A stretch of 64,000 nucleotides of DNA from Macrostomum lignano (lineage: Eukaryota), in the NCBI GenBank assembly GCA_002269645.1, contig NIVC01002429.1, positions 110,620-174,619 of the forward strand, given 5' to 3'. A program made the position numbers and the translations under genes. Shown here piece after piece: positions 2,422 through 20,900 of the stretch (the first letter of the stretch is position 1; every line of letters begins with the position of its first letter). The notes beneath the pieces were generated by a model. It saw only the letters and a program-made list of their open reading frames with translations. It ran no database searches and was not told the origin of the DNA.

Positions 2422-2876
2422 TTACTCATCGCGCGGCTCATCGCCTTCCGCTCCCGCCGCGTCATCTGCAGCGGCCGGAGCGGCGGTTTCATTCTCTTCC
2501 TCACCTGGCGCCGCCGCCGCGGCCGCTGACTCTGCGGCCTCAGGTGCCTCAGGCTCCGCTTCAGCTTCGGCCTCGGGCTTATCCTCAGACTCAGGCTCAG
2601 CTTCAGGTTCCGCTTCAGGCTTCGATTCGGCCTCCGGCTCAGCTTCAGGCTGAGGTTCATCAGCTTCAGTCTCCGGCTTAGCCTCATCAGCTTCAGCCTC
2701 GGGTTCAGGCTCAGCCTTAGCCTCCGGTTCAGCCTCGTTCTCGACCGCCGCCGGTTCCGCGGGTTCCTCGCTTTTACCCTCCGCGGGTTCCTCGCTTTCA
2801 CCCTCCGCGGATTTGGCCTCGCCCTGTTCCTGGCCACTCTTGCGCATCTCGGCCACCTCTTTGCGAGCTTGCATGC
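2422..2876 (-). CDS. SPA17-like last coding exon: second half of the final IQ motif plus an E/A/P-rich acidic tail
   Basis: Acceptor ttgtag|GC completes Gly in IQAGFRG-MQARKE. EPEAE low-complexity tail, TAA at 2424-2422. Confidence 0.88.
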
Positions 2877-5800
2877 CTACAAGAATCAAGCAGCGTATTT
2901 TATAATAAAAATCACACTAGCTTTACATTTTGCTTGAAGCCTGTGGAAACGGATAGAGAGTAACGGATACTCACCGCGGAAACCAGCCTGAATTTTGGAA
3001 GCCGCCTGATTCTGAGCCGGATCGTTGGGATCCACGGCATTGGCGGCGTCCGAGTCGGCTTCGCCCTTGGCCTCGTCGGTCTTCTCCTCCTCCTCAGCCG
3101 CGACCGGCTTCTTGAATTGAGAAAAGAAATGAGTTGGTTTTTGGGGAGAGTTCGGGTTCGAGCGTCAAGTGTCGGGGTTTCTGCGGCTAAGGCTGTTTTG
3201 CAGTTTTAGTATAGTGGACTAGCCATTTGCTCCCCCATAAATAAATGCAATCTAAATCTAGAAATTCAGTACTTCCAGATCCATTTAGAAACTGCTTGGG
3301 TGTCATCTCACCGTCTCAGGGCTCGAAGAGGATCTCAGATTAGAGAAGAAGGCGATCATTTTTTTCACCTGTCCGTCTTTTTGACAGCTGGCCATGGCCT
3401 AATAAGTATATTCTCTTATTTAAACCAAGCTAATTCTCGCTAGCAAAAAAGCAGAAAAGGTAAAGGATTTGTTTCGTCTTCTTCTTGTTCCGTGAAGAAA
3501 TCAGCGCTGATAACTAAGCAAAATGCCGCTCTATTGGTTATGAAGTAGATGAGATTTGCATTCACTAAAACCTCGCTCTTTATTGGCCGTCGCAAAAGGA
3601 ACGCCAGAAATGAGGAAAAGGTGCGAAACGAATAGGGCAAACACGGAGCGCGGTGCGCAGTTCTGTGTTTTACAATTTGCAGCAAGAGGAGAGCTTTGAG
3701 TAACAGAGGGAGAGAATGCAGGGGCTAGCATTGGCGCCATATGGCGTATACAATTGAGATTTTTGTGACCTCTACTAATGCATTCGCCCATTAAATGCTC
3801 TAGAAAGCTTGTCTGCAAATAACAAAGCGACTTGGAATTTATTTCTTGTAATTTTTTTAATAATACTACTCTCGTAGTTCGAAAACCTTTTAGTCCTCTC
3901 CCTATTGTCTTTTAAATATGCAAAAAACTATTAAATTTCACGAAGAACACCTTCCGATAATCAGGTAAAGCGCGAAATCACTAAGCGGTTATTGTACTTG
4001 GCTAACAAAAATGCAGTGAAATATTGAGCAGAGAAAGCCATAAAATCCAGTGCCAAGCTTGCCGTTAATAGTTGCAGAAATCTGACTCTTTGTAAAGGGG
4101 CAGGAAAAAACTGACGTTGGTCAAGTTCGAATTCATGAAGCCAGCTTGCGAAATGCAGCAGGTTCTGGCTCCATTTTGTTATAATGAGCTGCGTAATGTT
4201 GTAGGCTGAGAAAATCCGATTTCAGATACAAAAATGCCTCTGTTAGCTTTCAACTAAAGCATATTGTGCGGCGGCTTCTATTGCAAAATTGCGACACAAA
4301 GCGAGGCTTAATAAAAAGTCAAGCCACTCCCGATAATTATGTCAGTAATCCGTTGCGACCTCGAAGTCTCGTGAAGAATCTTCAGCCGCTGATGACTCGA
4401 CGGGCGCAGAAAAAGTCTCATCGACCGGTGAAGACTCAGCTGCAGCTTCATCTGCAGCCTCCTCAACCGGTGAAGACTCAACGGTAGTTTTATCAGCAGC
4501 CTCCTCAACCGGTGAAGACTCAACGGCGGCCTCATCAGCAGCCTCATCAACCGGTGAAGATTCAACTACAGCTTCATCGGCAGCCTCCTCAACCGGTGAA
4601 GACTCAACAATAGCTTTATCAGCAGCCTCATCAACCGGTGAAGACTCAACAATAGCTTCATCAGCATCATACTCAACCGGTGAAGACTCAACTGCAGCTT
4701 CATCAGCAGCCTCCTCAACCAGTGAAGCCTCAACGACGGCTTCATCAGCAGCCTCATCAACCAGTGAAGATTCAACTGCAGCTTCATCAACAGCCTCCTC
4801 AACCGGTGAAGACTCAACAATAGCTTTATCAGCAGCCTCCTCAACCGGTGAAGACTCAACGACGGCTTCATCAGCAGCCTCATCAACCGGTGAAGACTCA
4901 ACAATAGCTTTATCAGCAGCCTCCTCATCAACCGGTGAAGAATCAACAATAGCTTCGTCAGCATCATACTCAACCGGTGAAGACTCAACGGCAGTTTTAT
5001 CAGCAGCCTCATCAACCGGTGAAGAATAAAGTGCAGCTTCATCCGCAGCCTCCTCAATGGGTGAAGACTCAACGTCAGCTTCATCAGCAGCCTTATCAAT
5101 CGGTGAAGACTCAACGTTGGCTTTATCAGCAGCCTCATCAACCGGTGAAGACTCAACAATAGCTTTATCAGCAGCCTCCTCATCAACCGGTGAAGAATCA
5201 ACAATAGCTTCGTCAGCATCATACTCAACCGGTGAAGACTCAACGGCAGTTTTATCAGCAGCCTCATCAACCGGTGAAGAATAAAGTGCAGCTTCATCCG
5301 CAGCCTCCTCAATGGGTGAAGACTCAACGTCAGCTTCATCAGCAGCCTTATCAATCGGTGAAGACTCAACGTTGGCTTTATCAGCAGCCTCCTCAGCAGG
5401 TGCAGACTCGGCAACCACGGCGGTCTGCAGATCTACAGTCTCCTCAACGGGTGCAGACTCGGCAACCACGGCGGTCTGCAGATCTACCGTCTCCTCAACG
5501 GGTGCAGACTCGGCAACCACGGCGGTCTGCAGGTCTACCGTCTCCTCAATGGGTGCAGACTCGGCAACCACGGCGGTCTGCAGATCCGCAACCTCATACT
5601 CATACTCGGTGTCAAAAGTAAGCAAAGCCTCGAATGCAGCCACTTTGTCATTAATTTTTGAGTCAAAGGGGGCTGACTCGGCAATGCTTGTTGGCTGCTT
5701 GATGCTGGGTACCGCACCAGAGGGAAATGGTTGCTAGGGAAAGAGAAATAACGGGGGAAACTTAGAACGCATATAAGCATACCTGCTTACAATTAACAGC

Positions 5801-8800
5801 AAACTTGAGAATATGGAAAATGTGATGTCAGTGGGAACATCTTTGATTTATTAGCCTACCAAGATGCAATAATTTCACACCTCAAGTTTTCTGCAAGAAA
5901 TCTGTAAAGAAACAGAAAATGTCCCATCATGAAGCTTGACCATAATGAAACTGTGACACAATATAGTGTACTTGATTCAGAAATAAACGTTCGTTTTAAT
6001 TTAATAAGCTTCATTTTGGTAAAGAATCATGATAAGCATCACAGTTTTATCAAGGTCAAGTTTCAAAATCGATCCTTCACAAAGTTCTGCAACAAAGTTC
6101 TGAAAGTACATGTAGTTGCGTAACCTTCTGTATTGGCACCAACTTTTGCAAGAAGATGCTTTTAAAACTCGCCAAAGCGTTGCTTGCAACTGAAGAAGTT
6201 GGACGAGAGGTTCGCTTGTAGAAAATTTTTCAAGTGGGGCAGACCAGGGTCGCCTCATGGTTACGAGCTAAAACAAACGGATTAACCAAAGAGGCTTCTA
6301 CCTGGTTAAGTACACGCCTTGGAATCATTGAAAAGTATAAATTATTTACGACAAAAATAGCAAGAAAATATGCAATTTATGGTCTAATAAAGAAAAGGAA
6401 AATTCAAGCAAGAACTGCACTGGTTTCTAACCTCTTCCTCGGCCTCTTTCTGCTCCGCCGCTTCGTCCTGCTGCTCTTGGCCTGTTTCGTCCTTCAGCTT
6501 CTTGCGAGTCTGATAGCCTTTGAAGCCGGCCTGGATCTTGATGGCAGCCTGGGCCAGCTCGGGATCGTTCAGGTCGATCTCCTCCTCTGGGTTCTCCTGC
6601 TAGATGGGGATTGGGAACAAATAGAATACACTGTAGTGAGCTTGCTCATCTCTTGGTTGCACTGAGCTCAGCTACGAGTCTACGACTCAGAATCTACTTA
6701 AGAGCTTAATAACACGTATTTTCAAAATATTACGTTTTTTTCTAAATTACTATTTAGAATGGTATGAGTTTTTGACTAGCTAATGTACATTCTTGATGCT
6801 TTAGAAAGGTAAGGACTATCGACTAGCTAATGTACATTCTTGATGCTTTAGAAAGGTAAGAACTATCGACATGCTAATGTATATTCTTGATGCTTTAGAA
6901 AGATAAGGACTATCTACTAGCTAATGTACATTATTGATGCTTTAGAAAGGTAAGGACTATCGACTAGCTAATGTACATTATTGATGCTTTAGAAAGATAA
7001 GGACTATCTACTAGCTAATGTACATTATTGATGCTTTAGAAAGGTAAGGACTATCCACTAGCTAATTTACATTCTTGATGCTTTAGAAAGGTAAGGACTA
7101 TCGACTAGCTAATGTACATTATTGATGCTTTAGAAAGATAAGGACTATCTACTAGCTAATGTACATTATTGATGCTTTAGAAAGGTAAGGACTATCCACT
7201 AGCTAATGTACATTATTGATGCTTTAGAAAGATAAGGACTATCTACTAGCTAATGTACATTATTGATGCTTTAGAAAGGTAAGGACTATCGACTAGCTAA
7301 TGTACATTATTGATGCTTTAGAAAGATAAGGACTATCTACTAGCTAATGTACATTATTGATGCTTTAGAAAGGTAAGGACTATCCACTAGCTAATGTACA
7401 TTATTGATGCTTTAGAAAGATAAGGACTATCTACTAGCTAATGTACATTATTGATGCTTTAGAAAGGTAAGGACTATCCACTAGCTAATGTACATTATTG
7501 ATGCTTTAGAAAGATAAGGACTATCTACTAGCTAATGTACATTATTGATGCTTTAGAAAGGTAAGGACTATCCACTAGCTAATGTACATTATTGATGCTT
7601 TAGAAAGATAAGGACTATCTACTAGCTAATGTACATTATTGATGCTTTAGAAAGATAAGGACTATCTACTAGCTAATGTACATTATTGATGCTTTAGAAA
7701 GGTAAGGACTATCCACTAGCTAATGTACATTCTTGATGTTTTAGAAAGATAAGGACTATCGACTTGCTAATGTACATTATTGATGCTTTAGAAAGATAAG
7801 GACTATCTACTAGCTAATGTACATTATTGATGCTTTAGAAAGGTAAGGACTATCCACTAGCTAATGTACATTATTGATGCTTTAGAAAGATAAGGACTAT
7901 CTACTAGCTAATGTACATTATTGATGCTTTAGAAAGGTAAGGACTATCCACTAGCTAATGTACATTATTGATGCTTTAGAAAGATAAGGACTATCTACTA
8001 GCTAATGTACATTATTGATGCTTTAGAAAGATAAGGACTATCTACTAGCTAATGTACATTATTGATGCTTTAGAAAGGTAAGGACTATCCACTAGCTAAT
8101 GTACATTCTTGATGTTGTAGAAAGATAAGGACTATCGACTTGCTAATGTACATTATTGATGCTTTAGAAAGGTAAGGACTATCGACTAGCTAATGTACAT
8201 TCTTGATGCATTAGAAGGGAATGAGCTATAGCCTGGCTAATGCACATATAATGCAAAGGTAAGCTTGCTTCATTATACCTGAGGCTCCTCGGCCGCCTGC
8301 TCCTGAGCCTCGTCCTGCTGCTGCGGTTTCTCAGCCTCTTCGCCAGCATCCGGGGCCGCCTCCTTGAATGAAAGCGAGAATTAGGATTAATTTTCATATA
8401 AAGCTGCGCTCTACTCGATACGAAATCAAACTGAGACAAAGACAACAGAGAGAAAACTAGGCTACGTGTGAAAAGTGGAAAATGTTAACAAAATGACAGT
8501 AAAACGAATATTTGGTGAGGTTTAAATTAATATTTTATTAGTAGGGGGGTTACCTTGCTGGCACTCTTGCGACTCAGCGGACCCTTTGACGAGCGCTCTC
8601 GATCGCCAAAGCAACACAGAAGAAATGAGCTCATGCTTCTGAGCCAATAAGTTATCTGAGTCTACACACCACTGGCTTAAGCTATTTGACACTAATTTGT
8701 TTTCTCTGCACAGCTGCACCTTTGTTAATTTGGCGGCAAAAAGTGCACATGCGCCGCCGAGCAATAGCAGGCTTGAGGGTGAGAGTGAGTGAAATATTGG

Positions 8801-11800
8801 AAGCAGGCCAGGAGCGAGAGGCCGAACGCAGAGAGCGTATATTTATGCATTTTATCCGCTGCAGGGTCTCGACTCTCGCCAGCTGAAAACTGTCTGACTT
8901 TTGGAATAGGAGAGCCGCACGGCCTCACCTGTGCGCGCAGGCCCGCTTCAGTTTTCAGAACTTCTCTCTCTCTCTCTCTCACACTCAACCCTGAATGCTG
9001 TATCCATCGGACCTACAGTTTACACACACGCCGGAAGCAGATATTACCAATTGATAAACTTGGGACTTCCGTGTGCAAGTAGTCTGACTTGAACATCCCT
9101 CACTGTAAGATTAGTGATGAGCCTCTTACAGCTGCCAGGTGCACAGTCAGGTGGATGACTTAAAACGGTTTGAATGCGCAGGACCTACTGCAGCGTCGCT
9201 CGTATAAAATTCCAGTCAAGTTCTCCAAAAATAAACCCCGTTGCCTGCTTTCAAATAAACAGCCACTTGTACGGGACTGCCAAATGGAGGCAACTTAGCA
9301 GTTCTTGTGCTGTCAAATTAATAATTCATGGATACTTCTGCTCCAGTTGGACGGTAATCACCACGGAGATTAATTATAGCCTTTTAAGATTTGAGAAGAT
9401 TTGATAGAAGTCTATGCACAGGTGCTGTACAAGAGTGCATAAGCACAGGCAATGTGTACTTTTTGGCAAGGAATTTGCTCTATAGAGTTTCTATGCTCTA
9501 TAGTGAGTTAGTAGCGGTCAATTCTGAGCTCTTGTTGAGTCTTGCAACAAGTTGGCTTAAATTCACGGTTGCTGAAGGTTTGCCTAGAAAAGCACAATGA
9601 ACGAAAAATGCTTTCCAGTGTTAATTAGCGAGCTGTTAATATTGGGATTATGTGAATCTCAACAACACAATGGGACAAAAAACACGGAATAAACTATTAT
9701 CGGTCTCCATGCAGCCTAGAGCTCTTGTTAATAGGCACGAATTGAATTCGCAAACAAAGGAAGGTGATTGAACGATGCAGCATTGAAAGCAAAGCAGGCA
9801 TCCCAAACGCTTTGATAACTACAATGTAACAATACGCATGGTAGATGAACTCTACTCAAGTGCTCCCTGCTTGGTGACTGGCTACCAGGGACCCTGGAAC
9901 TGTGAAAACTTAACTTTGTTTCCTTTTTAATCCAAAAACAAATACTTGTGCGGATTTAAAATTTACTTTTCTCTGTGAAAATCTCTAAAATTTCTCTGAG
10001 TTCAGTCTTCCAGTCCAGGGCAGTTCCAGTTGTCCCTGATAATTACTAAGTCAGTAGTAAAAATGATAAAAGCTAGTACTAATAAAATTGGGACTTAGGA
10101 AACTAAAACAAACTCGGCACTGGGTAAGTGCCAGTGACTGGGAACGCTCGAGCGGCATAGGATACCTTTCCTGTTTCTGCGGAGTTAGCGTCCCCGGAGC
10201 GGGACTTATGGCTGCTCCATCCGCGTTGAATTTTGACAGCAGCCGCCTGCACCTCTGGGTCGTTCAGATCTATATCTACCTCCTCTTCACCGTCCTTGTC
10301 TCTAATCTGTCCCGCGGGCTCTGGAGCAGACTCTTCAACTACATCAGGCTCGCTGACTTCATCAGCTTTCTTAGCCCGAGACTTGTGGCTGCTCCAGCCG
10401 CGTTGTATCTTGACGGCAGCTGCCTGAACCTCTGGGTCTTCCAGATCGATGTCTACCTCTTCTTCATCATTTTTCTTCTCTTCTTCCGCAGTTTCTGGAG
10501 CGCCCTCTTCAGCTGGCTTTGCTGCATCATCTTCATCAGCTTTCTTAGCCCGAGACTTGTGACTGCTCCAGCCGCGTTGTATTTTGACAGCAGCTGCCTG
10601 AACCTCCGGGTCTTCAAGATCAATATCTACTTCTTCTTCAACATTGTCCTTCTTCTCTTCCACAGATTCTTGAGCAGTCTCCTTAACAGCATCATCTTCA
10701 TCTGTCTTATTGGCTCGAGACTTGTGACTGCTCCAACCACGTTGAATCTTGACAGCGGCTGCCTGCACTTCTGGGTCTTCAAGGTCAATATCTACCTGCT
10801 CCTCTTCGGCTTCCTCTTCAACCGGCTCGGGAGCAGTCTGTTCAACTGGCTCAGCTCCATCAGCGTCCTCAGACTTCTTAGAGCGGGACTTGTGGCTGCT
10901 CCAGCCTCGTTGAATCTTAACAGCAGCTGCCTGCACCTCTGGATCCTCCAGATCTATGTCTACTTCCTCTTCTTCATCGTGTTTATTCTCTTCCGCAGAT
11001 TCTGAAGCAGTTTCTTTAACTGGTTCGACAGCTTCATCTTGATCAGTCTTTTTAGCCCGAGACTTGTGGCTGCTCCAGCCTTGTTGAATCTTGACAGCAG
11101 CTGCCTGCACCTCTGGATCTTCCAAATCGATGTCAACCTCTTCCTCTTCCTCAGCGTTTTTCTCAACCGGTTTAGCTTCATCAGCTTCATCAGACTTCTT
11201 AGGGCGGGATTTATGACTGCTCCAGCCTTTCTGAATCTTAACAGCAGCCGCTTGCACCTCTGGGTCTTCCAGATCTATGTCTACCTCTTCCGCAACCCCC
11301 GGGTCCCCTGCCTCGGTCTTGGCAGCAGCGGTGCTTTCATCGGCTGCAGACTGAGCAGCCTCGACGGCTGCTGCTGCTGCCCTCATTGCCTGAAAGCGTC
11401 GCGCAAAAAATGTTCTTGCAGAGTGCGAGTACGCAATGTAGCTTGCAAAAACTAATGCTGTATATTAATTAGCCTTGACACGAACTATTTTTAGCGAAAT
11501 AGACATAATTAGAGTTTAATTATTAGAAAGCAATTGTTAAAAAGCAAAGATGTTAAAAAAACAGTAGCGATGCATGATCATGGGGGTTTACAATAGACAG
11601 TGCCTTATTGTGATCCGCTCATGTATTGACAGCTTATGTGGTAATTTAAATTGAAAATCCAGCTCACCTCTCGCTTGGCCTTCATATCCTTTCGGGTGCG
11701 GTAGCCCTTGTAGCCGGCCTGTATTTTCACGGCCGCCTCTTCCAATTCGTCCTTGGATGGGCCCTCGATGATTTTCTGTCGGGAGAGAGTTGAGAGTGCA

Positions 11801-14800
11801 CATTTGATTGGTTATTTATTGTTGAGATGACTGCTATATGTGCAAGAGACCGCTGTCGGGGAGCAGCAATAGCTGCTTGAACTCAATATTATGGATCGAG
11901 GTGGTACAGACATCTTTAATGACAGTTCACAGCCATTTTTACCCAAATCAGTATTACAGTAAACAAAAAATGAGCTGTAGAAATAGTAAAAGTCCCAACA
12001 AACTGCCATGAATCAAATCGGAATCCAAAAATTCGGGAATATAAATGATTAAATTAACTTTAAAAAAATATTTTAAGGGTTCAATCGTGCTTTCATTAAG
12101 CCAATAGGATTCATTTCCGTAAATAGGCTTATGGAAAGCTCTGCCTTCATTTACATTAGAGAACGTCCATATATGGAAATGAATACATTTTACTCTGAGC
12201 CATTCATTGCAAAGTAATCAACTTATGCTGCAAATTATCTAGAGCAAACAGCGCACAAATCCAAGTGAAACAGCGAAGATAACCTCATTTACAATCGCTG
12301 GCATTGTTATTTATATATTTCTTGATGTCTGACTGCATAAATACTTTGGCGTGGTAAGAAAGAGTAAGACGTGCATGGGCAAATAAAAATAAATAATATT
12401 TAAAGAGGTTAGAAGCGACCAAAGTCAACTGCAAAACTAATTGGGACCAGAAACGCAGACAGCAGATTGGGTACTTGGCGGTGTTCACGCGGTCCACACC
12501 CACACGCAAACTGCAACAAACCAAACCGGGCTGTAGGCTCCCCTTTGCGTTGCCAAGCATCTCAGAATGAATATACATGTAAATACCGGCGTATGTGCGC
12601 AAATTTGTACCGACTATTTTGGGCACAAATGTTAATAATAATAGCATCACAATTCGTATTCGAATTCGGCTACAACTCTGCCAACTCTGTGTTTACTTTA
12701 GCTTGGTAGCAAACGCTTCGCTTGATACCAAACCGCCCGAACGCATTATTCTCTTCGCTCCCCGATGCCAATGAGTAGTAAGTAAAGCATTTAAATGCGC
12801 AGATAGTAGCAGTTTCACAAATCAGTTTAGATAAGCCGTGAGATTCAATTAACTATGCAAGTTCAGACTTGCAATTTCCACCGTTTCGCCTTGTTTATAC
12901 AACCGATTACAACCAAGCACAGATTACGCAGAACGGGAGCAAGTAACTCATGAGTTTTGGCTTTGCGACCATGATAGCTTTTGGTCTAGGGGGAAGCTAA
13001 AGGGTAGGCTGGATTGATAATGCGGGTAAATTGAAGCTTGAGATTGAGACTTGTTGATTATTCGCACCTTGGCTAAGCGCTGGATTGGCCAACGTCCTCC
13101 ACCCCATCCTCACCCGCATTCGCTCCTCTCTGTCGTGAAACTCCTGCCTCGCTTCGGCTTCTCGCGTCTGGCGGTCGTAGAACCAGTCGGAGAATTTGAC
13201 AGGCGACGGGGGCCCATTCGACGGTGGCGAGAACTGGCGCGGCAGTGACTGCACCGTCGCTCGGTGCGGCGATTTCGGTGCGGCTCTGCTGGCCGGCTGC
13301 GTCTCAGCCTCGTCGCCGCCGTCTTTACCGACCACGCCACCATTCTCGGGCTTCGCGGCCAAGTATCGCTTCTTCAAAGAAGCCCATCTGTCGGCGTAGT
13401 TAATATTGTCTTGCTTGCGGAGGAAATCATACCGACTCATTGTGGCCGCCTTTTTAATATTGCCCGGCTTTGGTGGCGCCTGGTGCATGCTCTGGGACCT
13501 AGTCACAGTAATGGTCTCGGTGACCTCCGATGGCACCTCTGTTGCTGTCTTATCCGCATCCGGTTGACTCGGTGACTCGATAGTTATCTGAGGTGTCACG
13601 CGCACTTGTTTGTTGTCTACAGTCTTACTGGCCGCAGGTGTGGGAGTCCGATCATTTTCACCGGTTTTCGAGCTAGCCTTCGGCTCAGGAGCATTGCTCT
13701 TTCCGCTTTTGCCGCCCGGCTTTGCAGCATCCTTGTTCTTCTTCTTGCGTCGACCGAAACAGCCCAGCATAGTTTGGCTTTAGACGAATTTCGTTGCCTC
13801 GTGCCTTTGTTAAGAGAATGAAGCTCTATGGAGAGCGCAAAGATCACCTGTCGATTGATGAGTAAATAGCGTCAGAAAATGCTGCCAACCTAGCCGCAGA
13901 AGAGGCTGCGCGCCGAGCTTAGCAACAAGAAATCAAGATGGGGTTGCTTGCCACTCGCCGCTAGCGCACTAGAGCCTGGTGTACAATGCCGGCATCCAGC
14001 CAGGCCAGCCAATGACGAACAAGGAACCGAGAACTGACGTTATCGTAGAGGAGATATCGCACACACAATGAACGATTAGCTTGTTGCCAAACTGACTGGA
14101 CAGGAGCAGTGACAAAGCGCTTGCGCCAAAGCTAAAATTCTGCGCAAATTTGCAGACAGCCACCCGGCTGAGGAGGGCTTACAGTCCAGGCAGAAGGAAA
14201 GTGTTTCACTACCTCTTCTAGTGCAGCTCTTTCCCTGCAACCAACGCGAGCTGAGCAAAGTGGGGCGGGTGCAGCGCTTTACTGTCTTCTGCTTTGGAAC
14301 TCCTCTTCTTTTGCTTTGGCTTCTGTCTTCTGGTTGTGTCTTCTGCTTTTTTATAAAAAAAGTCGAACCAGCAGACCAATATGCAGCGTTCCGCAGAGCA
14401 GTTGAGTTGAATTGGCAAGAGCGGTTTGCTCCTGGGGCTCCGAATGAAGCGTTCTTCTTCTCTGTCTCTCTCTATTCTCTTTTTAGTTCTTGTTTGTGCA
14501 AATTTGTACAGCTCTGTTCTCTCACACACTCCGCTCTCTCCTCTCTCTCTCCTTGCATGCTTGTAGAACTCGATCTATGCCCAGCGACCAGTGGTGTAGG
14601 TGCTGCGCTGCGGTCTTCTTGGGAGGCGAGGGAGGATGGGTTGGCGCCGGCCAAGTGCGCCGGTACTGCGCAATAAAGAACTCAAGGTCTCGGAGGGGGC
14701 CCAGCCCGGTATATACCAGCCTCACCTCGCAGTCACAGCTCGTACTTGCCAGCCCGTTTCTAAGTGTCCATTTATACAAGATACGCATTAGTGTATATAG

Positions 14801-17800
14801 CCAACGCTTTAATTAGAATTCACTTTGAGCCCAGGGCTGCAAGACAGCATGAATTGGAAGTTGGAACAGATACGTATTATATACAGGCGTATAGCTATTT
14901 TTCACAATATTAACGAGCTGTAATAATGAGTAGGTGGGGCTAAGTACAAGCTTAACAGCTGCACTGGCTAAACTGTCGATCCATTGTGTATTCTATTGTA
15001 TATTAGTGATCAACTGTCCGAGTAATACGAATGAAATCGACGAGGAAATTCTATTGTACGTTTAATGAACAATTCCTTTTTATGTGTAGTTCTCTGACTA
15101 AATTACATGTACGAATTCAGATATTCGAATAACTCAGACTAGACACTCCGAGATTCAAGAGATTTATTAGTTTAAGGTGGAAGGAATAATTCGTTTGGTA
15201 GGTAATTAATTATGTGTTTTTGAGTCTGCATGGAGTGACATGGAGTGAAAATGACAATGCTTATAAAAAAACTCGCCAAACTGTGTTTTTGATAATAGCT
15301 ATTTTAGTAGCGTGAGTAACAGCAGTTGTTGTTGTCCCAGAATAATAGACTACATAGCACAGAGCCGCAGGCTATGGGAGGAGCGGCTCTTAACGGTTGT
15401 CGCATTAATGTACATTGCTCCAAATGAATGTACACTGGCCGCAATTAAGCCGAGACCCCTAGACGCCCAGCCCCGTCTCTCTGACCCAGACAGGCTAGGC
15501 TGGTGGAGCTCTCGGGTAAATATTGATTTTTCTCTCTCCCCCACTGTACGCGAAACCGAAGCAAACAAAGCGAGACTTGGGCTCGCCCAGGGGGCAGTGC
15601 GACGATAAATAAGCCCTGGCCTAGTGGACTACTCTTCCACTTCAGACAAAACCTGTTGTTGTCTAAAAAACACCCCCAGGCCCTGTCAGCTACTACAAGC
15701 CTACATAGAAACTGCGAATTGGCCGGTGCAATGATGACCTTAATGCGAGAAAGCCTTTGCAAGCTAGCCACTACTTTACTGGCTAGATTTATCCGTATTT
15801 AACTCTCAAACAATAGGAAAGGCAAGGGTGCGTGAGTCAAAATATATCCAACTACGCTACTTGCTACGACTAGGAGGGTAGTAGTATTTAAAACATTTTT
15901 ATCAAGCGCAGCTTGTTAAAATCTGCTTCAAGCACTCCCTGATTTTAAAAGTTGCTTAGCTCATACACTGTACAGGACAAAACACTGTAATCATTTAAAA
16001 CATAGCAGTAGTGTATGTGGCATTTTATCTCAACAGACAAAACACCATAAATAACTAGGCTTGAAAATGGCCGGCAAAAAAGTCACTTGCTGCGGCAGTA
16101 AGCGGGGTAGAATTATAAAAATTTCAGCGTGCACTTTTATTAAAAGCTTCTCCATCTGTTCGGCCGTGAAGCCGATGAAAGAAACGGAAACTAAGCAGAA
16201 AGAAAGGAGGCGACCGGACGCATGAGCGAGCGGGTCGAGTTGGACAAACATGCCCTATCCTAGCCGAAGGAAAGGGAAATCTATCCCCTCCCTCAGCCCC
16301 ATCGCTGCATATTTATCAATGCTAGAGATCGAGAGTGGCTCAAGTGGGGGCAGTCGGCAGCAAATCTAGCAGCAAAAGGCATGGTCGAATGTCCCGAAAA
16401 AGCAAGAGGAGAGAAAACAGGAGCTGTGCAGACCGCGAAGAATACTTGGGAGAATTTAGCGACAGCGAACGATCTATAGCAGGTCAGACAGACCCGGACA
16501 GCGCTGTTTGAGGCTGGCAAGAAGTGCATTTCACGCTTTGCTTGTACCAATGACTATATGCGCACGCATGCATAGTGTAATAGTAGTACTGCACCCGATA
16601 CCACAGTTCCCCATGCCCCTGCAGTCGGCCAAATAACTTCAGTCGATAATACGATACGAAACAACTTTACTTTCCAAGATATCTGTCGCTAGTGCAAAAG
16701 TCTGCAGCATCATATTACAGGATTATGTTAATTATGACTTCGCAGATATAGGCTATGATAAACTAATAAGAAGACAGCATTGAATGAGTACACACAGGAA
16801 GTGCATCCATTATTTGCTTTGCAATTGCCCAAAAATGTACACAGAAGCATGCTCTTACAGTAAAGCACAAAGACATGCTTACAGAATCTTCTTCCTCCGC
16901 ATCAGCGGCCGCTGAAGCTGGCTGGTTTTTCTTCTCCAGCAGGTCCTTCCGTGTTTTGTAGCCTTTGAACCCTGCCTGGATTTTCGCCGCCGCGGCCTCC
17001 ACCTCGGGATCGTTCAGGTCGATGTCCTGCAGTGGCAAGAGTTGATGAATTTGGGATGTCAGGGTCTGGCAGGTCTTCAGCTCATCTAGAAATCTTAAGA
17101 TCATTTTAGAGACCCTGATACTTTTGAAGAGACCCAGACACCCTTGAAGAGACCCATACTCTTGTAGAGATCCTGACACCCTTGAAGAGACCCAGACACC
17201 CTTGAAGAGACCCATACTCTTGTAGAGATCCTGACACCCTTGAAGAGACCCAGACACCCTCGAAGAGTCTCAGACACCCTTGAAGAGACCCAGACACTCT
17301 TGTAGAGACCCTGACACCCTTGAAGAGACCGACCCAGACACCCTCGAAGAGTCTCAGACACCTTTGAAGAGACCCAGACACTCTTGTAGAGACTCAGACA
17401 CCCTCGAAGAGACCCAGACACCCTCGAAGAGTCTCAGACACCTTTGAAGAGACCCAGACACTTTTGTAGAGACTCAGACACCCTCGAAGAGACCCAGACA
17501 CCCTCGAAGAGTCTCAGACACCTTTGAAGAGACCCAGACACCCTTGAAGAGAACCAGACACCCTTTGAAGAGAATCAGACATCCTTAAAGAGACCCAAAC
17601 ACCCTTGAAGAAACTCAGACACCCTTGAAGAGACCCTGAAACCCTTGAAAAGACCCAACCCAAACACCCTTACAGAGACCTTGGCACCCGTATACTGTAG
17701 AGACCCTGACACCCGTAAAGAGACCCTGAGACCCTTATACTGCAGAGACTCTGACATCCTTATAGAGACCCAGACAACCTCAGAGAGACCCTGACACCCT

Positions 17801-19462
17801 TGAAGAGACCATGACACTCTTGAAGAAACCCTGACACTCTTAAAGAAACCCTGACACCCTTGAAGAGACCCTGGCACTCTTGAAGAAACCCTGACACTCT
17901 TAAAGAGACCCTGACACCCTTGAAGAGACCCTGGCACTCTTGAAAAGACCCTGACACCCTTGGAGAGACTCTGACACCCTTGAAGAGACCCTGGCACTCT
18001 TGAAAAGACCCTGGCACCCTTGGAGAGACCTCTAAACCCTCATGGAGAGCCTGACACCGTTATCAAGTCTTACACTTACCACTTCCTCAGCCGATCCCTG
18101 TTCGGGAGCCGATTGTCTGTAAAATGGAAAGCCAATTCAAACTTTAAATGATGATTTGACATCCGATTTTTCCTAGCTGTGCTCTGCACTACGACCTACG
18201 CATGTACTACTGCTGCTGCTCGGGAATCACTAGCCAATAGTGATGCATTTAGAAACTCGAACTAAAAGAGGCGGCCAGATTGATGGCGGATACGGTAAGA
18301 TTGAGTTGCAGAAATTGGACAGGGCGCCGTCTCTTTCTCGCGGAGGCTGAGTTGTCTGGATCGATCGAAGGAATTAGCGAGGGGCGGCAGAGGGAGAACG
18401 AACGAGCAGTTCTGATTAATAATGCTATAAGCTTAACTCTGACTTAATCTGGTTTGCACTTTTTCGTCATAAAGTCTGCGCGACCTTTCTATATGAGATG
18501 CTGGCTGATTTACAAAGAATTATTCAGTTGGGAGAATTGCCCGCCCAGGCGTTATGAACCTGTGTCTGACTCCGAGACAGACAAGCCAGCAGTTAACCAA
18601 ACAGACGTGAAAATAACTAAGACACATAGTGTAAAGAGACTGAGACCCCAAGACAGACACTGAAACAGGCAGACAAGCAAACGCCAAGACAGACAGTAGT
18701 GAAAGGTGGACACTAAGACAGCAGACACTAAGACATCAGGATAGGGGGACACTAGGACAGACAGACACCAGGACACAGACACCAGGGCAAGTTAGACACT
18801 AGGACAGGCAGAAACCAGGACAGGCAGACACCAGGACAGGCAGACACCAGGACAGACAGATATTAGGACAGGCAGACACCAGGACAGGCAGACACCAGGA
18901 CAGGCAGACACCAGGACAGGCAGATATCAGGGCAGACAGACACCAGGACAGACAGACACCAGGACAGACAGACACCAGGACAGGCAGACACCAGGACAGG
19001 CAGACACTAGGACAGGCAGACACCAGGACAGGCAGACACCAGGACAGACAGACTGTGCACCCACTTGATGGCTTCGCGCTCCTGGTGGCCGCGCACAGCA
19101 GACTGGATCTCGCTGGCCGCCTTGTCCTCGCGCAATTTGGCGGCCTCCTTTTGCGCCGCGTGCCGCCTAAAATTGGTCTGGATGACCTTGGAGGCGTCCT
19201 GCTGCTGCGGGTCGGATGGGTCGATGGTGGGCTGCTGGAAGGAGGTGTTGTTGTAGAACCTGTCCTCGACTTTGGCAGCCAGTTGGGCCGGATCGTCGTC
19301 GCCAGTTTCCTCGCGTCGGCGGATCAACTCCTCGAAGTACATGGCGCCGAAGGTGTAGATGTCGGCTGGCTGGGAGCGAAGCACCTCGCGGGCGAGGCCC
19401 TCCAGGAGTGATTGAAATCCGCGAGGAACACGGAGCTTCGTGCTGCTGAACGGTACTGACAT
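2422..19462 (-). CDS. SPA17: SPA17/Sp17-like protein: RIIa dimerisation/docking domain plus 13 IQ or IQ-like motifs in acidic spacers (946 aa in the 10-exon model)
   Basis: Exons (minus strand): 19462-19065, 18116-18080, 17026-16883, 11775-11668, 11389-10166, 8362-8279, 6599-6432, 3398-3312 (optional), 3110-2975, 2876-2422. All introns are GT-AG, phases are compatible, and the total is 2841 nt = 947 codons. The N-terminus MSVPFSSTKLRVPRGFQSLLEGLAREVLRSQP...KVEDRFYNN matches the vertebrate Sp17 N-terminus (MSIPFSNTHYRIPQGFGNLLEGLTREILREQP...KVEDRFYNN) from memory. Confidence 0.88.
2975..3110 (-). CDS. SPA17-like exon carrying the first half of the final IQ motif
   Basis: ttcaag|AAG...QAASKIQAGFRG|gtgagt; phase 0 in, phase 1 out; 136 nt. 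Confidence 0.88.
3312..3398 (-). CDS. Short exon (A)MASCQKDGQVKKMIAFFSNLRSSSSPET: cassette exon or alternative start
   Basis: ttattag|GCC ATG G... ACG|gtgaga; 87 nt, phase 0 to phase 0. Confidence 0.55.
4342..5733 (-). CDS. Alternative terminal exon of the SPA17-like locus: acidic 14-aa (VESSPVEEAADEAA) and 20-aa repeats, 463 aa
   Basis: Strong acceptor tttctctttccctag|CAA at 5733, phase 0 and in frame with ORF 4342..5643; TGA at 4344-4342; AATAAA on the minus strand at 3843-3838. Confidence 0.7.
   Translation of the reverse strand, partial: QPFPSGAVPSIKQPTSIAESAPFDSKINDKVAAFEALLTFDTEYEYEVADLQTAVVAESAPIEETVDLQTAVVAESAPVEETVDLQTAVVAESAPVEETVDLQTAVVAESAPAEEAADKANVESSPIDKAADEADVESSPIEEAADEAALYSSPVDEAADKTAVESSPVEYDADEAIVDSSPVDEEAADKAIVESSPVDEAADKANVESSPIDKAADEADVESSPIEEAADEAALYSSPVDEAADKTAVESSPVEYDADEAIVDSSPVDEEAADKAIVESSPVDEAADEAVVESSPVEEAADKAIVESSPVEEAVDEAAVESSLVDEAADEAVVEASLVEEAADEAAVESSPVEYDADEAIVESSPVDEAADKAIVESSPVEEAADEAVVESSPVDEAADEAAVESSPVEEAADKTTVESSPVEEAADEAAAESSPVDETFSAPVESSAAEDSSRDFEVATDY
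6432..6599 (-). CDS. SPA17-like exon with a canonical IQ motif (EIDLNDPELAQAAIKIQAGFKGYQTRKK)
   Basis: NAGNAG acceptor tag|cag, donor GAG|gttaga; 168 nt, phase 0 to phase 0. Confidence 0.88.
6776..8205. repeat. 47-bp intronic satellite, ~30 copies, with alternating variants
   Basis: CTAGCTAATGTACATTATTGATGCTTTAGAAAG(G/A)TAAGGACTATC(C/T/G)A; first two copies start at 6776 and 6823. Confidence 0.95.
8279..8362 (-). CDS. SPA17-like acidic linker exon (EAAPDAGEEAEKPQQQDEAQEQAAEEPQ)
   Basis: tttcattcaag|GAG...CAG|gtataa; 84 nt, phase 0 to phase 0. Confidence 0.85.
8554..8634 (-). CDS. Alternative first coding exon MSSFLLCCFGDRERSSKGPLSRKSASK (di-Cys N-terminus)
   Basis: ATG at 8634-8632, exactly 27 codons, donor AAG|gtaacc in phase 0, compatible with the 8362 acceptor. 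Not in the ORF track. Confidence 0.65.
8928..9000 (-). promoter_or_regulatory. Putative internal promoter or non-coding first exon (GA-rich, ending in CAG|GTGAGG)
   Basis: (GA)n tract followed by a consensus donor at 8928, about 300 nt upstream of the MSSFLLCC start. Confidence 0.35.
10166..11389 (-). CDS. SPA17-like large exon with 7 tandem IQ-like repeats (VDIDLEDPEVQAAAVKIQRGWSSHKSR)
   Basis: tttcag|GCA ATG...AAG|gtatcc; 1224 nt = 408 codons, phase 0 to phase 0; matches ORF 10103..11386. Confidence 0.9.
11668..11775 (-). CDS. SPA17-like IQ exon (KIIEGPSKDELEEAAVKIQAGYKGYRTRKDMKAKRE)
   Basis: ctcccgacag|AAA...GAG|gtgagc; 108 nt, phase 0 to phase 0. Confidence 0.88.
13114..13770 (-). CDS. 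Alternative first coding exon MLGCFGRRKKKNK... (219 aa, basic and Ser/Pro-rich)
   Basis: ORF 12997..13770 has an internal phase-0 donor CGG|gtgagg at 13113 compatible with the 11775 acceptor. A 5'-UTR acceptor lies near 13848 and a GA-rich tract near 14550. If unspliced it is a nested 257-aa gene. Confidence 0.65.
16883..17026 (-). CDS. SPA17-like IQ exon (DIDLNDPEVEAAAAKIQAGFKGYKTRKD)
   Basis: actgcag|GAC...TCT|gtaagc; 144 nt, phase 0 to phase 0. Confidence 0.9.
17105..18050. repeat. Degenerate ~19-20-bp intronic minisatellite
   Basis: GAGACCC(A/T)GACAC(C/T)CTTGAA and variants. Confidence 0.9.
18080..18116 (-). CDS. SPA17-like 37-nt micro-exon ((K)QSAPEQGSAEEV)
   Basis: ttttacag|A...GTG|gtaagt; converts phase 2 to phase 0, exactly bridging exon 1 and the 17026 exon. 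Confidence 0.82.
18775..19050. repeat. 16-bp intronic minisatellite
   Basis: GGACAGGCAGACACCA repeated. Confidence 0.9.
19065..19462 (-). CDS. SPA17: SPA17 first coding exon: RIIa domain plus two IQ motifs
   Basis: gccATG at 19462; IQTNFRRHAAQK and IQSAVRGHQER; donor AA|gtgggt at 19064. Confidence 0.92.
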
Positions 19463-20801: not shown

Positions 20802-20900
20802 CTTGACTATTAATAAAAATAAAACTCAGCATTTCTTTAGTGCTTTATGGCTCGTTGATTTCTTTGCAGATTGTCAAAGTTAATGAGACGTAGCAGACTC
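20802..20900 (-). promoter_or_regulatory. Putative non-coding first exon of the SPA17-like gene
   Basis: Donor AA|gtaagt at 20802; a 5'-UTR acceptor ttacag| lies just upstream of the ATG (~19479). The TSS position is a guess. Confidence 0.35.

What the first reader, a model, noticed from the sequence alone, without database searches (positions are those of the whole stretch)
2422..19462. One locus appears to encode both an SPA17 (RIIa/AKAP-docking) protein and a ladder of GAP-43/neuromodulin-like isoforms with Cys-containing N-termini
Seen in sequence: besides the RIIa start, introns of this gene hold three more ATG-initiated exons on the same strand: MLGCFGRRKKK (13770), MSSFLLCCFGDRER (8634) and MASCQKD (3395). 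Each ends in a phase-0 GT donor compatible with the next IQ-region exon, and each has Cys near the start. Two share a C-F-G motif followed by basic residues. The predicted products carry 13, 10, 2 and 1 IQ motifs on a shared acidic tail. Established: Sp17 binds AKAPs through its RIIa domain and calmodulin through IQ; GAP-43 uses an N-terminal MLCC palmitoylation site, an IQ motif and an acidic rod. Inference: alternative promoters switch one calmodulin-binding scaffold between ciliary/sperm AKAP anchoring and membrane anchoring. This would link the SPA17 and neuromodulin/igloo-type architectures in one gene.
Basis: partly seen in the sequence, partly recalled or inferred. Interest (0 to 1): 0.85.

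Follow-up and report, generated by a model that had tools for sequence, protein, structure and literature searches.

The report
Flatworm SPA17–IQ gene with nested starts
This is one gene of the flatworm Macrostomum lignano in which the public RNA-based annotation already joins a cilia/sperm docking domain (SPA17 type) to a chain of calmodulin-binding motifs and an acidic tail. One of the three proposed internal start exons (MLGCFGRRKKK) is a conserved coding exon that probably gives a membrane-anchored short form; the other two are unproven.

Summary
The window is Macrostomum lignano contig NIVC01002429.1. The sequence facts hold: all exons, ATGs, phase-0 donors and the 13/10/2/1 motif counts are where stated, although 7 of the 13 motifs are degenerate (IQRGWSSHKSR).

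The RIIa exon is a full-length SPA17 orthologue. The RNA-seq-based GenBank CDS PAA57957.1 (511 aa) joins it to the IQ exons and the acidic tail exactly at my predicted junctions, skipping the repeat exon.

- **Exon A (MLGCFGRRKKK):** real coding sequence. M-x-GCFG-[KR]RKKK is invariant in four homologues and is the annotated N-terminus of a paralogous M. lignano gene. It also has a splice acceptor 7 nt before its ATG, and one gene model reads it as internal.
- **Exon B (MSSFLLCCFG):** it shares the CFG motif with A, found in only 2 of 434 ORFs in the window. It could instead be a 42-nt cassette exon.
- **Exon C (MASCQKD):** no better than chance.

By sequence the IQ modules are closest to SPA17, radial-spoke protein RSP23, PEP-19 and neurogranin, not GAP-43. 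Teleost Sp17 gene models show the same layout: SPA17 exons spliced to neurogranin exons, including an MDCH start mini-exon. The mechanism (internal promoter or spliced-leader trans-splicing) and acylation are untested.

The parts
19065..19462 (-). E1: start exon coding the RIIa docking/dimerisation domain, the EDRFYNN block and two IQ motifs. It is equivalent to a complete vertebrate SPA17.
   Evidence: Pfam RIIa 4.5e-13. Residues 1-137 align with residues 1-139 of the 151-aa human Sp17 chain 8j07_K, E 3.2e-30. Included in PAA57957.1.
18080..18116 (-). E2: 37-nt linker exon (phase 2 to phase 0).
   Evidence: AG/GTAAGT sites. Included in PAA57957.1.
16883..17026 (-). E3: first acidic-IQ module (DIDLNDPEVEAAAAKIQAGFKGYKTRK).
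   Evidence: PDB PCP4/PEP-19 hit, E 0.046. 63% identical to the teleost neurogranin-like exon, E 4e-13. Included in PAA57957.1.
14526..14617 (-). A0: 92-nt exon with a pyrimidine tract plus AAG acceptor and a GTGAGA donor. It is either the 5'UTR exon of exon-A transcripts or an in-frame bridge from E3 to exon A.
   Evidence: The path E1-E2-E3-A0-A-E4 is open and equals the first 481 residues of UniProt A0A1I8GWL3 with one substitution.
13114..13777 (-). Exon A: ATG at 13770, MLGCFGRRKKKNK..., 219 codons, AG acceptor 7 nt before the ATG, donor GTGAGG. Conserved Cys plus polybasic N-terminus followed by conserved blocks (RYDFLRK, ADRWA, SLPRQFSP, VKFSxWFYxRQ).
   Evidence: Homologues P0121 (66% identity), P0122 and P0123, with M1, G3 C4 F5 G6, R8 K9 K10 K11 invariant. 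100% identical in the second genomic copy.
11668..11775 (-). E4: IQ exon (EEAAVKIQAGYKGYRTRK).
   Evidence: Included in PAA57957.1.
10166..11389 (-). E5: 408-codon exon with seven tandem units VDIDLEDPEVQAAAVKIQRGWSSHKSR (degenerate IQ). Skipped in the GenBank model and partly used in the UniProt model.
   Evidence: TRF period 174, 5.5 copies. The second copy differs by an in-frame 9-nt indel.
8554..8634 (-). Candidate exon B: ATG 8634, MSSFLLCCFGDRERSSKGPLSRKSASK, donor GTAACC. Alternative reading: a 42-nt in-frame cassette 8595..8554 behind a pyrimidine tract and an AG.
   Evidence: CFG motif shared only with exon A among 434 ORFs. No homologue or transcript found.
8279..8362 (-). E6: acidic linker exon.
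   Evidence: Included in PAA57957.1.
6432..6599 (-). E7: acidic-IQ module (EIDLNDPELAQAAIKIQAGFKGYQTRK). NAGNAG acceptor (tagcag).
   Evidence: Included in PAA57957.1. The UniProt model uses the second AG.
4342..5733 (-). X8alt: 463-codon open frame with a good acceptor and its own stop (TGA). Mostly 42-nt repeats (AADEAxVESSPVxE). A possible alternative terminal exon.
   Evidence: Open in the second copy too (405 codons, same ends). In no public model.
3312..3395 (-). Candidate exon C: ATG 3395 (GCCATGG), MASCQKDGQVKKMIAFFSNLRSSSSPET, donor GTGAGA.
   Evidence: Chance-level by ORF statistics. No homologue found. M13L difference in the second copy.
2975..3110 (-). E9: acidic stretch plus the first half of the last IQ (DPNDPAQNQAASKIQAGFRG|).
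   Evidence: Included in PAA57957.1. The intron position inside the IQ is shared with the M. lignano paralogue.
2422..2876 (-). E10: second half of the IQ (MQARKEVAEMRK) plus a 138-aa E/A/P-rich tail. Stop TAA at 2424-2422.
   Evidence: Tail is E 33%, A 27%, P 14%, net charge -46. Best PDB match is the Chlamydomonas RSP23 IQ region, E 3.6e-7.

Best explanation
This is a single, complex SPA17-family gene of Macrostomum lignano (GenBank BOX15_Mlig011073g1).

**Structure (shown).** Exon 1 alone is a complete SPA17: an RIIa docking/dimerisation domain, the EDRFYNN block and IQ motifs. Downstream lie phase-0 cassette exons. Each carries an 'acidic stretch plus IQ' calmodulin-binding module of the SPA17/PEP-19/neurogranin type. 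The gene ends in a strongly acidic E/A/P tail. The RIIa exon is spliced to these exons in RNA-based models.

**Long form (inferred).** It docks as a dimer on an amphipathic helix of an AKAP-type axonemal protein, as SPA17 and RSP7 do in radial spokes. There it holds several calmodulins. Module number is set by exon skipping.

**Exon A (shown to be conserved coding sequence; its use as a start is inferred).** It supplies a second N-terminus, M-L-G-C-F-G-RRKKK. One acylatable Cys next to a polybasic patch would place the same calmodulin-binding chain on membranes, as neurogranin, GAP-43 and igloo are placed. This form would arise in one of two ways: from an internal promoter upstream of the short exon A0, or by spliced-leader trans-splicing onto the acceptor 7 nt before the ATG.

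**Exons B and C.** B may be a second start of the same kind. C is probably a chance ORF.
For: - The window is identical to NIVC01002429.1 over 29,468 nt.
- PAA57957.1 equals my E1+E2+E3+E4+E6+E7+E9+E10 model exactly.
- That annotation was built from RNA-seq with StringTie, TACO and TransDecoder (PMC5730564).
- E1 aligns end to end with solved vertebrate Sp17 chains, E 3e-30. It also hits RSP7 and PKA RII D/D domains.
- Acidic-IQ modules follow the RIIa domain in mollusc, amphioxus and M. lignano paralogue Sp17-like proteins.
- Exon A has homologues at 66%, 40% and 38% identity with an invariant M-x(1,2)-GCFG-[KR]RKKK start.
- The paralogue is annotated as a complete 365-aa protein starting there. 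The spliced cDNA contig L004 has 989 nt upstream without any RIIa coding.
- The genomic copies have an in-frame stop 3-4 codons (window 3, L001 and L002 4) upstream of the ATG and an AG 2-7 nt upstream.
- Teleost precedent: Poecilia Sp17-like joins SPA17 exons to a mini-exon. That mini-exon has an acceptor 10 nt before ATG GAC TGT CAC AAT|GT. It is followed by a neurogranin-like exon.
Against: - No transcript or database protein from this locus starts at A, B or C. Fourteen exact isoform look-ups failed.
- GenBank lists only the RIIa-start product here.
- A UniProt gene model (A0A1I8GWL3) reads exon A as internal, through A0. The Cys would then not be N-terminal.
- The AG before exon A is AAG, not the YTNCAG motif typical of M. 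lignano trans-splice sites.
- The two genomic copies are 97-100% identical, so they give no conservation test for B and C.
- Acylation, calmodulin binding and localisation are all inferred.
Confidence: 0.55

Rival explanations
1. Only RIIa-start proteins are made. Exon A, entered through A0, is an optional internal cassette of a very long SPA17-like protein. B is a 42-nt in-frame cassette (RSSKGPLSRKSASK) or nothing. C is a chance ORF. The Cys motifs are never N-terminal.
For: - UniProt A0A1I8GWL3 (898 aa) has exactly this E3-A0-A-E4 path, open in frame, with canonical AG/GT sites.
- Exon A has a cis acceptor.
- B's 'FLLCCF' is coded by a T/C-rich tract followed by an AG at 8597-8596, typical of an acceptor region.
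- GenBank shows only the RIIa-start product.
Against: - That UniProt entry appears to be an automatic gene model from an older assembly (own knowledge; its provenance was not checked here), not a transcript. An open frame across A0 in the right phase has a chance of roughly 7% (my estimate).
- The initiator Met directly before GCFG is invariant in four homologues, although the residues between them vary.
- The paralogue and a cDNA contig start there, without RIIa.
Confidence: 0.2
2. These are two or more separate genes on one strand: an SPA17 gene (E1-E3) and a downstream igloo/neurogranin-like IQ gene starting at exon A. They are transcribed as one precursor and resolved by spliced-leader trans-splicing and polyadenylation. 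The annotated RIIa-to-tail fusion is a read-through or an assembly chimera.
For: - About 7% of M. lignano transcriptional units are precursors that encode several proteins, and about 30% of genes are trans-spliced.
- In the divergent M. lignano paralogues the RIIa protein (A0A1I8IBG4, own stop after five units) and the MPFGCFG protein are separate models.
- Mammals have SPA17 and NRGN as separate neighbouring genes.
Against: - E1-E3 has no stop codon when spliced, and I saw no terminal exon between 16883 and 14617.
- The fusion junction E3-to-E4 spans exon A and is present in both genomic copies' models.
- No spliced-leader sequence or YTNCAG site is seen at exon A.
Confidence: 0.1
3. One reading: four alternative promoters give RIIa, A, B and C starts, all used, with 13, 10, 2 and 1 IQ motifs.
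For: - All three ATG exons are intact in both genomic copies.
- B shares CFG plus charged residues with A, 2 of 434 ORFs.
- B and C lie only 191 and 201 nt upstream of the next constitutive exon.
- TATA-like or CCAAT-like strings lie upstream of each (read, not tested).
Against: - C is indistinguishable from seven other chance mini-ORFs, and its Cys is uninformative.
- No homologue of B or C was found in the paralogous locus or in any search.
- The public transcript skips E5, so 13 and 10 motifs are upper bounds, and seven of them are degenerate.
Confidence: 0.1

Closest known systems
SPA17 (sperm surface / sperm autoantigenic protein 17) of vertebrates
   Same: Collinear over the whole vertebrate protein: RIIa D/D domain, EDRFYNN block and an IQ at the end (E 3e-30 to PDB chains 8j07_K, 9fqr_Ic and 7my4_A).
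   Different: The vertebrate protein is about 150 aa with one IQ. Here that is only exon 1. It is followed by 4 to 11 further IQ-type modules and a 138-aa acidic tail, giving 511 aa in the annotated form.
Teleost spa17 / nrgnb (Sp17 isoforms of Poecilia, Salmo, Neolamprologus; zebrafish nrgnb)
   Same: One gene joins SPA17 exons to an acidic-IQ exon. It contains a mini-exon whose ATG-Cys codons (MDCH) sit 10 nt behind a splice acceptor, the same layout as exon A here. The zebrafish gene has been called both spa17 and neurogranin b (PMC9415131).
   Different: The fish gene has one or two modules, not many. Its Cys motif is MDC[CH] without a polybasic run. Homology of the start exons themselves is not shown.
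Neurogranin and PEP-19/PCP4 (calpacitins)
   Same: An acidic stretch (DIxLxDPE) lies directly before the IQ. E3 hits PCP4 in PDB (E 0.046). E3 is 63% identical to the teleost neurogranin-like exon (E 4e-13). Gly stands at the PKC-Ser position, as in teleost neurogranin. Mouse Nrgn and Spa17 lie in one small locus (PMC4098794).
   Different: Those are single-IQ proteins of 60-80 aa and are separate genes in mammals.
GAP-43 / neuromodulin
   Same: The predicted short forms have the same overall logic: an N-terminal Cys beside basic residues, an IQ, and a long acidic A/E/P-rich disordered tail.
   Different: No Neuromodulin or Neuromodulin_N Pfam hit. No PDB neuromodulin hit at E up to 10. There is no Ser at the PKC site. 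The resemblance is one of design, not demonstrated homology.
Drosophila igloo and arthropod 'neuromodulin-like' MGC-IQ proteins (e.g. Oppia nitens P0094, Oratosquilla P0130)
   Same: Short proteins with an acylatable N-terminus followed by two or three DIDLNDPE-IQ modules.
   Different: Those start MGC (a myristoylation signal). The flatworm starts have no Gly2. No link to an RIIa exon could be shown in arthropods (one search was uninformative).
Chlamydomonas radial spoke proteins RSP23 (NDK6) and RSP7
   Same: The last IQ and tail give the best PDB hit to the RSP23 C-terminal IQ region (DPAQ..AA.K.QA.FRG.QARKEVA.MR plus an E/A/P-rich tail), E 3.6e-7. The RIIa exon hits RSP7 (E 3e-5). PMC8339350 relates SPA17 to RSP7.
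   Different: RSP23 carries a nucleoside diphosphate kinase domain, and RSP7 has no such IQ array. In the alga the two functions sit on separate proteins.
M. lignano paralogues BOX15_Mlig000068g2 (MPFGCFGKRKKK + 3 IQ) and A0A1I8IBG4 (RIIa + 5 acidic-IQ units)
   Same: The same building blocks appear, and the intron inside the IQ (AGF[KR]G|MQARKEV) is at the same place.
   Different: They are modelled as two separate proteins, 38-65% identical to the window's exons. Their genomic linkage is unknown because the contig ends 4.1 kb upstream.

Membership tests
SPA17 | N-terminal RIIa docking/dimerisation domain | tested here: met
   Pfam PF02197, E 4.5e-13, residues 15-50. PDB hits to Sp17, RSP7 and PKA RII D/D domains.
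SPA17 | Collinear similarity over the whole protein, including the EDRFYNN block and the C-terminal IQ | tested here: met
   Query 1-137 aligns with 1-139 of the 151-aa chain 8j07_K, E 3.2e-30. Vertebrate Sp17 hits range from about 3e-39 to 4e-18.
SPA17 | Small protein (about 150 aa) with a single IQ | tested here: not met
   The annotated product is 511 aa with 6 IQ motifs. This also holds for mollusc, amphioxus and paralogous flatworm Sp17-like proteins.
SPA17 | Binds AKAP-type helices; located in axoneme or fibrous sheath | not testable with these tools
   Inferred from the RIIa domain and from Sp17 chains in PDB entries 8j07 and 9fqr, which I take from memory to be axoneme structures (one search lists chain names only).
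GAP-43 / neuromodulin | Sequence membership (Pfam Neuromodulin_N / Neuromodulin) | tested here: not met
   Only IQ was hit at E up to 1 for all short-form models. No neuromodulin chain among PDB hits at E up to 10.
GAP-43 / neuromodulin | N-terminal palmitoylated Cys pair next to basic residues | tested here: inconclusive
   The motif is present (A: MLGCFGRRKKK; B: MSSFLLCCFGDRER). Neither use as an N-terminus at this locus nor acylation is shown.
GAP-43 / neuromodulin | PKC-phosphorylated Ser inside the IQ (IQASFRG) | tested here: not met
   All canonical modules read IQAGF[KR]G or IQAGYKG.
GAP-43 / neuromodulin | Long acidic A/E/P-rich tail | tested here: met
   138 aa, E 33%, A 27%, P 14%, net charge -46. 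This is composition only.
Calpacitin-type acidic-IQ module (neurogranin, PEP-19) | Acidic stretch immediately N-terminal of the IQ | tested here: met
   DIDL[NE]DPE precedes 9 of the 11 downstream motifs, in E3, the seven E5 units and E7; E4 and E9 differ. PCP4 hit at E 0.046. 63% identity to the teleost neurogranin-like exon.
Calpacitin-type acidic-IQ module (neurogranin, PEP-19) | Small single-IQ protein encoded by its own gene | tested here: not met
   The modules are exons of a 17-kb multi-IQ gene.
igloo-type acylated IQ proteins | Met-Gly-Cys N-terminus (myristoylation plus palmitoylation) | tested here: not met
   None of A, B or C has Gly at position 2.
Spliced-leader trans-spliced internal cistron (M. 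lignano) | Trans-splice acceptor YTNCAG shortly before the ATG; spliced-leader reads | tested here: inconclusive
   An AG lies 7, 4 and 3 nt before the ATGs of A, B and C, but as AAG, CAG and TAG without the full motif. The motif is from PMC8629364. Read data were not available.

The most novel reading that the evidence does not exclude
SPA17 and the neurogranin-type calpacitins may be two products of one ancient bilaterian locus. In this reading the ancestral SPA17 gene carried downstream acidic-IQ exons. It also carried an internal exon that can act either as a spliced-in cassette or as a start exon giving a Cys-first, membrane-directed calmodulin buffer. The flatworm (exon A) and teleost spa17/nrgnb (MDCH mini-exon) would keep the undivided state. 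Tetrapods would have split it into the neighbouring SPA17 and NRGN genes.
Probability: 0.3. Interest if true: 0.75.

Novelty: new variant of a known kind. Interest (0 to 1): 0.5.

Why it matters
Neurogranin, PEP-19 and GAP-43 are treated as vertebrate neuronal calmodulin buffers of unclear origin. SPA17 is treated as a small cilia/sperm docking protein.

This locus points to a common origin in ciliary calmodulin scaffolds. Three things support that: the same acidic-IQ module follows SPA17's RIIa domain in flatworm, mollusc, amphioxus and teleost proteins; the Poecilia gene structure matches; and Nrgn and Spa17 are neighbours in the mouse. It also suggests a simple route to the neuronal forms: an internal start exon that swaps an axoneme anchor for a membrane anchor.

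M. lignano has transgenesis, RNAi and public RNA-seq, RAMPAGE and spliced-leader tracks. The switch could therefore be tested directly in an animal that has both multiciliated epidermis and a simple brain.

If exon A proves to be only an internal cassette, the locus is just an unusually long SPA17 homologue and is of modest interest.

Tried and rejected
1. **Exact look-ups.** Fourteen predicted isoforms (A, B, C and RIIa starts; with and without E5; both alleles; X8alt endings) were looked up. None is in the 15-billion-protein collection. This is weak negative evidence, because partial or allelic products would be missed.
2. **The search for homologous proteins.** It never returned the window's own proteins, although they are in the collection. 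They surfaced only in the representative search. The absence of B/C-start hits therefore says little.
3. **Paralogous locus L001.** There is no RIIa exon in the 4.1 kb before the contig end, and no B- or C-like exon. This is inconclusive for linkage.
4. **Cross-phylum synteny.**
   - The Oratosquilla MGC-IQ gene spans 230 kb, and no DNA was returned.
   - Haliotis Sp17-like is a single 927-nt exon with no IQ gene nearby.
   - Metagenome contig L008 has IQ exons but no RIIa within 10 kb.
   - Neolamprologus isoform X4 is not on record.
5. **Cys-rich 'N-termini' of other hits.** Examples are MLFCLFQ-, MSLCVWQ- and MFFSQ-. I rejected them as artefacts: they are translations of pyrimidine tract plus CAG acceptors by an ORF caller. 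The same worry applies to exon B.
6. **Second genomic copy L007.** It is 97-100% identical everywhere, so there is no selective signal for B or C.
7. **Spliced-leader sequence.** It was not found in the window or in any fetched locus.
8. **Literature.** No paper mentions Mlig011073 or Mlig023834. None states a common origin of SPA17 and neurogranin. One 'calpacitin' search was uninformative.

Full report
**What is in the sequence.**

The region is a eukaryotic, GT-AG spliced gene on the minus strand. I mapped 14 exon-like pieces, given as high..low window coordinates:

| Piece | Coordinates | Content |
|---|---|---|
| E1 | 19462..19065 | RIIa start, two IQ motifs |
| E2 | 18116..18080 | linker |
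| E3 | 17026..16883 | acidic-IQ module |
| A0 | 14617..14526 | short bridging or 5'UTR exon |
| A | 13777..13114 | ATG at 13770, MLGCFGRRKKK |
| E4 | 11775..11668 | IQ |
| E5 | 11389..10166 | seven tandem units |
| B | 8634..8554 | MSSFLLCCFG |
| E6 | 8362..8279 | acidic linker |
| E7 | 6599..6432 | acidic-IQ module |
| X8alt | 5733..4342 | repeat ORF with its own stop |
| C | 3395..3312 | MASCQKD |
| E9 | 3110..2975 | first half of the last IQ |
| E10 | 2876..2422 | second half of the IQ, acidic tail, stop |

So are the 13/10/2/1 motif counts. Pfam finds RIIa (4.5e-13) and IQ.

Two caveats apply to the counts:
- The seven E5 units read VDIDLEDPEVQAAAVKIQRGWSSHKSR. They lack the R/K-G core of the IQ consensus.
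- The public transcript model skips E5 altogether.

**Where it comes from and what is already annotated.**

A profile-free scan of 1.8 billion representative proteins returned two proteins that are the window's own products. Cluster look-up names them:
- PAA57957.1, 'hypothetical protein BOX15_Mlig011073g1, partial [Macrostomum lignano]', 511 aa.
- UniProt A0A1I8GWL3, 'RIIa domain-containing protein', 898 aa.

The contig NIVC01002429.1 is identical to the window over 29,468 nt. The CDS spans window 19468..2422.

My model E1+E2+E3+E4+E6+E7+E9+E10 equals PAA57957.1, minus its two leading residues, exactly. That annotation was derived from RNA-seq (StringTie, TACO and a de novo transcriptome, with ORFs called by TransDecoder; PMC5730564). 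The joining of the RIIa start to the IQ exons and the acidic tail is therefore transcript-based, not my inference.

A second genomic copy, NIVC01002259.1, is 97-100% identical. Its model (PAA59467.1) has the same exon composition, with a frameshifted C-terminal tail.

**What the parts are.**

- E1 alone is a complete SPA17. It aligns from residue 1 to 137 with the whole of solved vertebrate Sp17 chains (8j07_K, 9fqr_Ic, 7my4_A; E about 3e-30). It also hits radial spoke protein RSP7 and PKA RII docking domains. A structural and evolutionary study relates SPA17 to RSP7 of the radial spoke (PMC8339350).
- Everything after E1 is extra relative to vertebrate SPA17. It consists of 'acidic stretch plus IQ' modules (DIDLNDPExxxAAxKIQAGF[KR]G).
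- The same modules follow the RIIa domain in oyster, abalone, amphioxus and paralogous flatworm Sp17-like proteins.
- In PDB, E3 hits PEP-19/PCP4 (E 0.046).
- The last IQ plus tail hits, in order, the IQ region of Chlamydomonas radial spoke protein RSP23 (3.6e-7), Sp17 (0.007) and the neurogranin IQ (1.8). It does not hit neuromodulin.
- No Neuromodulin Pfam family is hit.
- The tail is E/A/P-rich with net charge -46.

The GAP-43 label is thus an analogy of design. By sequence the modules belong with SPA17, RSP23, PEP-19 and neurogranin.

**Exon A.**

This is real coding sequence.
- It has homologues at 66% identity (P0121, a Logan contig of another Macrostomum-like sample), 40% (P0122) and 38% (P0123, M. 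lignano BOX15_Mlig000068g2).
- The residues M1, G3 C4 F5 G6, R8 K9 K10 K11 are invariant in all four. Several internal blocks are invariant too.
- P0123 is annotated as a complete 365-aa protein that starts MPFGCFGKRKKK and continues into three IQ motifs.
- P0122 comes from a spliced cDNA-like contig with 989 nt upstream that contain no RIIa coding.
- The paralogue's second IQ has its intron at the same place as E9|E10.

So an exon-A-type N-terminus is used as a protein start in a sister gene.

At this locus, however, exon A also has an AG acceptor 7 nt before its ATG. A short upstream exon A0 has a pyrimidine tract, an AG and a GTGAGA donor. The path E3-A0-A-E4 is open in frame and is exactly what A0A1I8GWL3 models. 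Exon A could therefore be a start exon, an internal cassette, or both. An AG 2-7 nt before the ATG is also seen in the homologous genomic sequences.

**Exons B and C.**

A Cys in the first ten residues occurs in 28% of all 434 ATG-ORFs in the window. C therefore carries no evidence beyond a good Kozak context and donor.

B is different. CFG within the first 14 residues occurs in only two of the 434 ORFs, exon A and exon B. In A that motif is the invariant one. Against B:
- Its FLLCCF is encoded by a T/C-rich tract followed by an AG. The region may simply be the acceptor of a 42-nt in-frame cassette (8595..8554).
- I rejected similar 'Cys-rich N-termini' in other database hits as translated acceptor regions.
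- No homologue of B or C was found in the paralogous locus or in any search.
- Fourteen exact isoform look-ups failed.
- The second genomic copy is too similar to be informative.

**Mechanism.**

*Shown:*
- One transcription unit joins an SPA17 domain to multiple IQ modules and an acidic tail.
- All downstream exons are phase 0, so module number can vary by exon skipping. E5 is skipped in the GenBank model, and E7 has a NAGNAG acceptor used differently in the two models.

*Inferred:*
- The long form docks through RIIa on an AKAP-type helix in axonemal structures and holds calmodulin.
- The exon-A form replaces that anchor by a single Cys next to RRKKK, a typical S-acylation plus electrostatic membrane signal. 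That would give a membrane-bound calmodulin store like neurogranin, GAP-43 or igloo.

How the internal start is produced is open. It may be an internal promoter upstream of A0. It may be spliced-leader trans-splicing. About 30% of M. lignano genes are trans-spliced, and about 7% of transcriptional units encode several proteins (PMC5730564 and PMC8629364). The AGs before A, B and C do not match the YTNCAG trans-splice motif well.

From my own knowledge, unverified here: Macrostomum sperm lack a conventional flagellum. If so, the RIIa form would more likely act in epidermal or protonephridial cilia than in sperm.

**Comparison with vertebrates.**

Teleost RefSeq 'Sp17' proteins are RIIa plus a neurogranin-like end, MDCH.EECS.PQEEEDI.DIPLDDPEAN.AAAKIQAGFRGHMTRKK.

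The Poecilia mexicana gene is laid out as follows:
- SPA17 exons at 10001-10471.
- Five kilobases further, a mini-exon with an acceptor 10 nt before ATG GAC TGT CAC AAT|GTGAGT.
- The neurogranin-like exon at 16727-16927.
- The next gene downstream is a V-set/Ig gene.

The zebrafish counterpart has been named both spa17 and nrgnb (PMC9415131). Mouse Nrgn and Spa17 lie in one small locus with Siae, Vsig2 and Esam (PMC4098794). The flatworm E3 module is 63% identical to the fish neurogranin-like exon.

The layout 'acceptor, a few bases, ATG, Cys codons, donor' is thus shared by flatworm exon A and the fish mini-exon. I found no paper that draws this connection. Homology of the start exons themselves is not shown.

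**Verdict.**

- 'One locus, SPA17 plus calmodulin-buffer-like forms' is plausible and has a teleost precedent.
- 'GAP-43-like', 'alternative promoters' and the four-step ladder are not established.

Noticed in passing
window 4342-5733 (-): A 463-codon open frame with a strong acceptor and its own stop. It is mostly 42-nt repeats coding AADEAxVESSPVxE, in frame with E7. It stays open, with the same ends, in the second genomic copy (405 codons). It may be an alternative terminal exon and is in no public model.
   Followed up: partly
window 10166-11389 (-): The seven tandem units of exon E5 carry a variant motif, IQRGWSSHKSR, that has lost the R/K-G core of the IQ consensus. The exon is skipped in the GenBank model. 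Whether these units bind calmodulin is open.
   Followed up: partly
window 6775-8216, 17108-18030, 18731-19053: Large intronic minisatellites: 47 nt x 30.7, 20 nt x 45 and 16 nt x 20 copies. Many more fill the rest of the window. Several give long spurious ORFs.
   Followed up: no
L007 (NIVC01002259.1), gene 10001-26175: A second copy of the whole gene, 97-100% identical. It has a 1-nt indel in E10 that frameshifts the tail of its annotated protein PAA59467.1. This is either an assembly error or a decaying duplicate.
   Followed up: partly
window 2975-2876 region / PDB 7jrj_K: The last IQ and acidic tail resemble the C-terminal IQ region of Chlamydomonas radial spoke protein RSP23 (E 3.6e-7) more than any neuronal IQ protein. 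This hints that acidic-IQ modules are ancestrally ciliary.
   Followed up: partly
L009 (Poecilia mexicana KQ551355.1) 10001-20275: The fish Sp17-like gene contains a 25-nt mini-exon (about 15354-15378) holding a neurogranin-type start, ATG GAC TGT CAC AAT, behind an acceptor. A V-set/Ig gene lies directly downstream, in the position where (from memory) mammals have VSIG2/ESAM after NRGN.
   Followed up: partly
L005 (Haliotis rufescens JALGQA010000028.1) 10001-10927: The abalone Sp17-like gene (308 aa, RIIa plus IQ modules) is a single uninterrupted 927-nt exon. It may be a retrocopy.
   Followed up: no
window 38747-40953 (-) and 51221-51751 (+): Neighbouring genes: a GPKOW homologue (G-patch 9.6e-13; GPKOW_C 3.9e-10) and a C2H2 zinc-finger exon. 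ORFs at 21803-23803 (-) look retroelement-like by eye but have no Pfam hit.
   Followed up: partly
tool behaviour, versus 32: The word-indexed protein search never listed the window's own annotated proteins. They appeared only in the representative scan. Negative results from the indexed search for this locus should be read with that in mind.
   Followed up: yes
window 14526-14617 (-): Exon A0 contains an ATG (about 14558). After splicing to exon A it would open a short out-of-frame upstream ORF overlapping the MLGCFG start, a possible translational control element.
   Followed up: no
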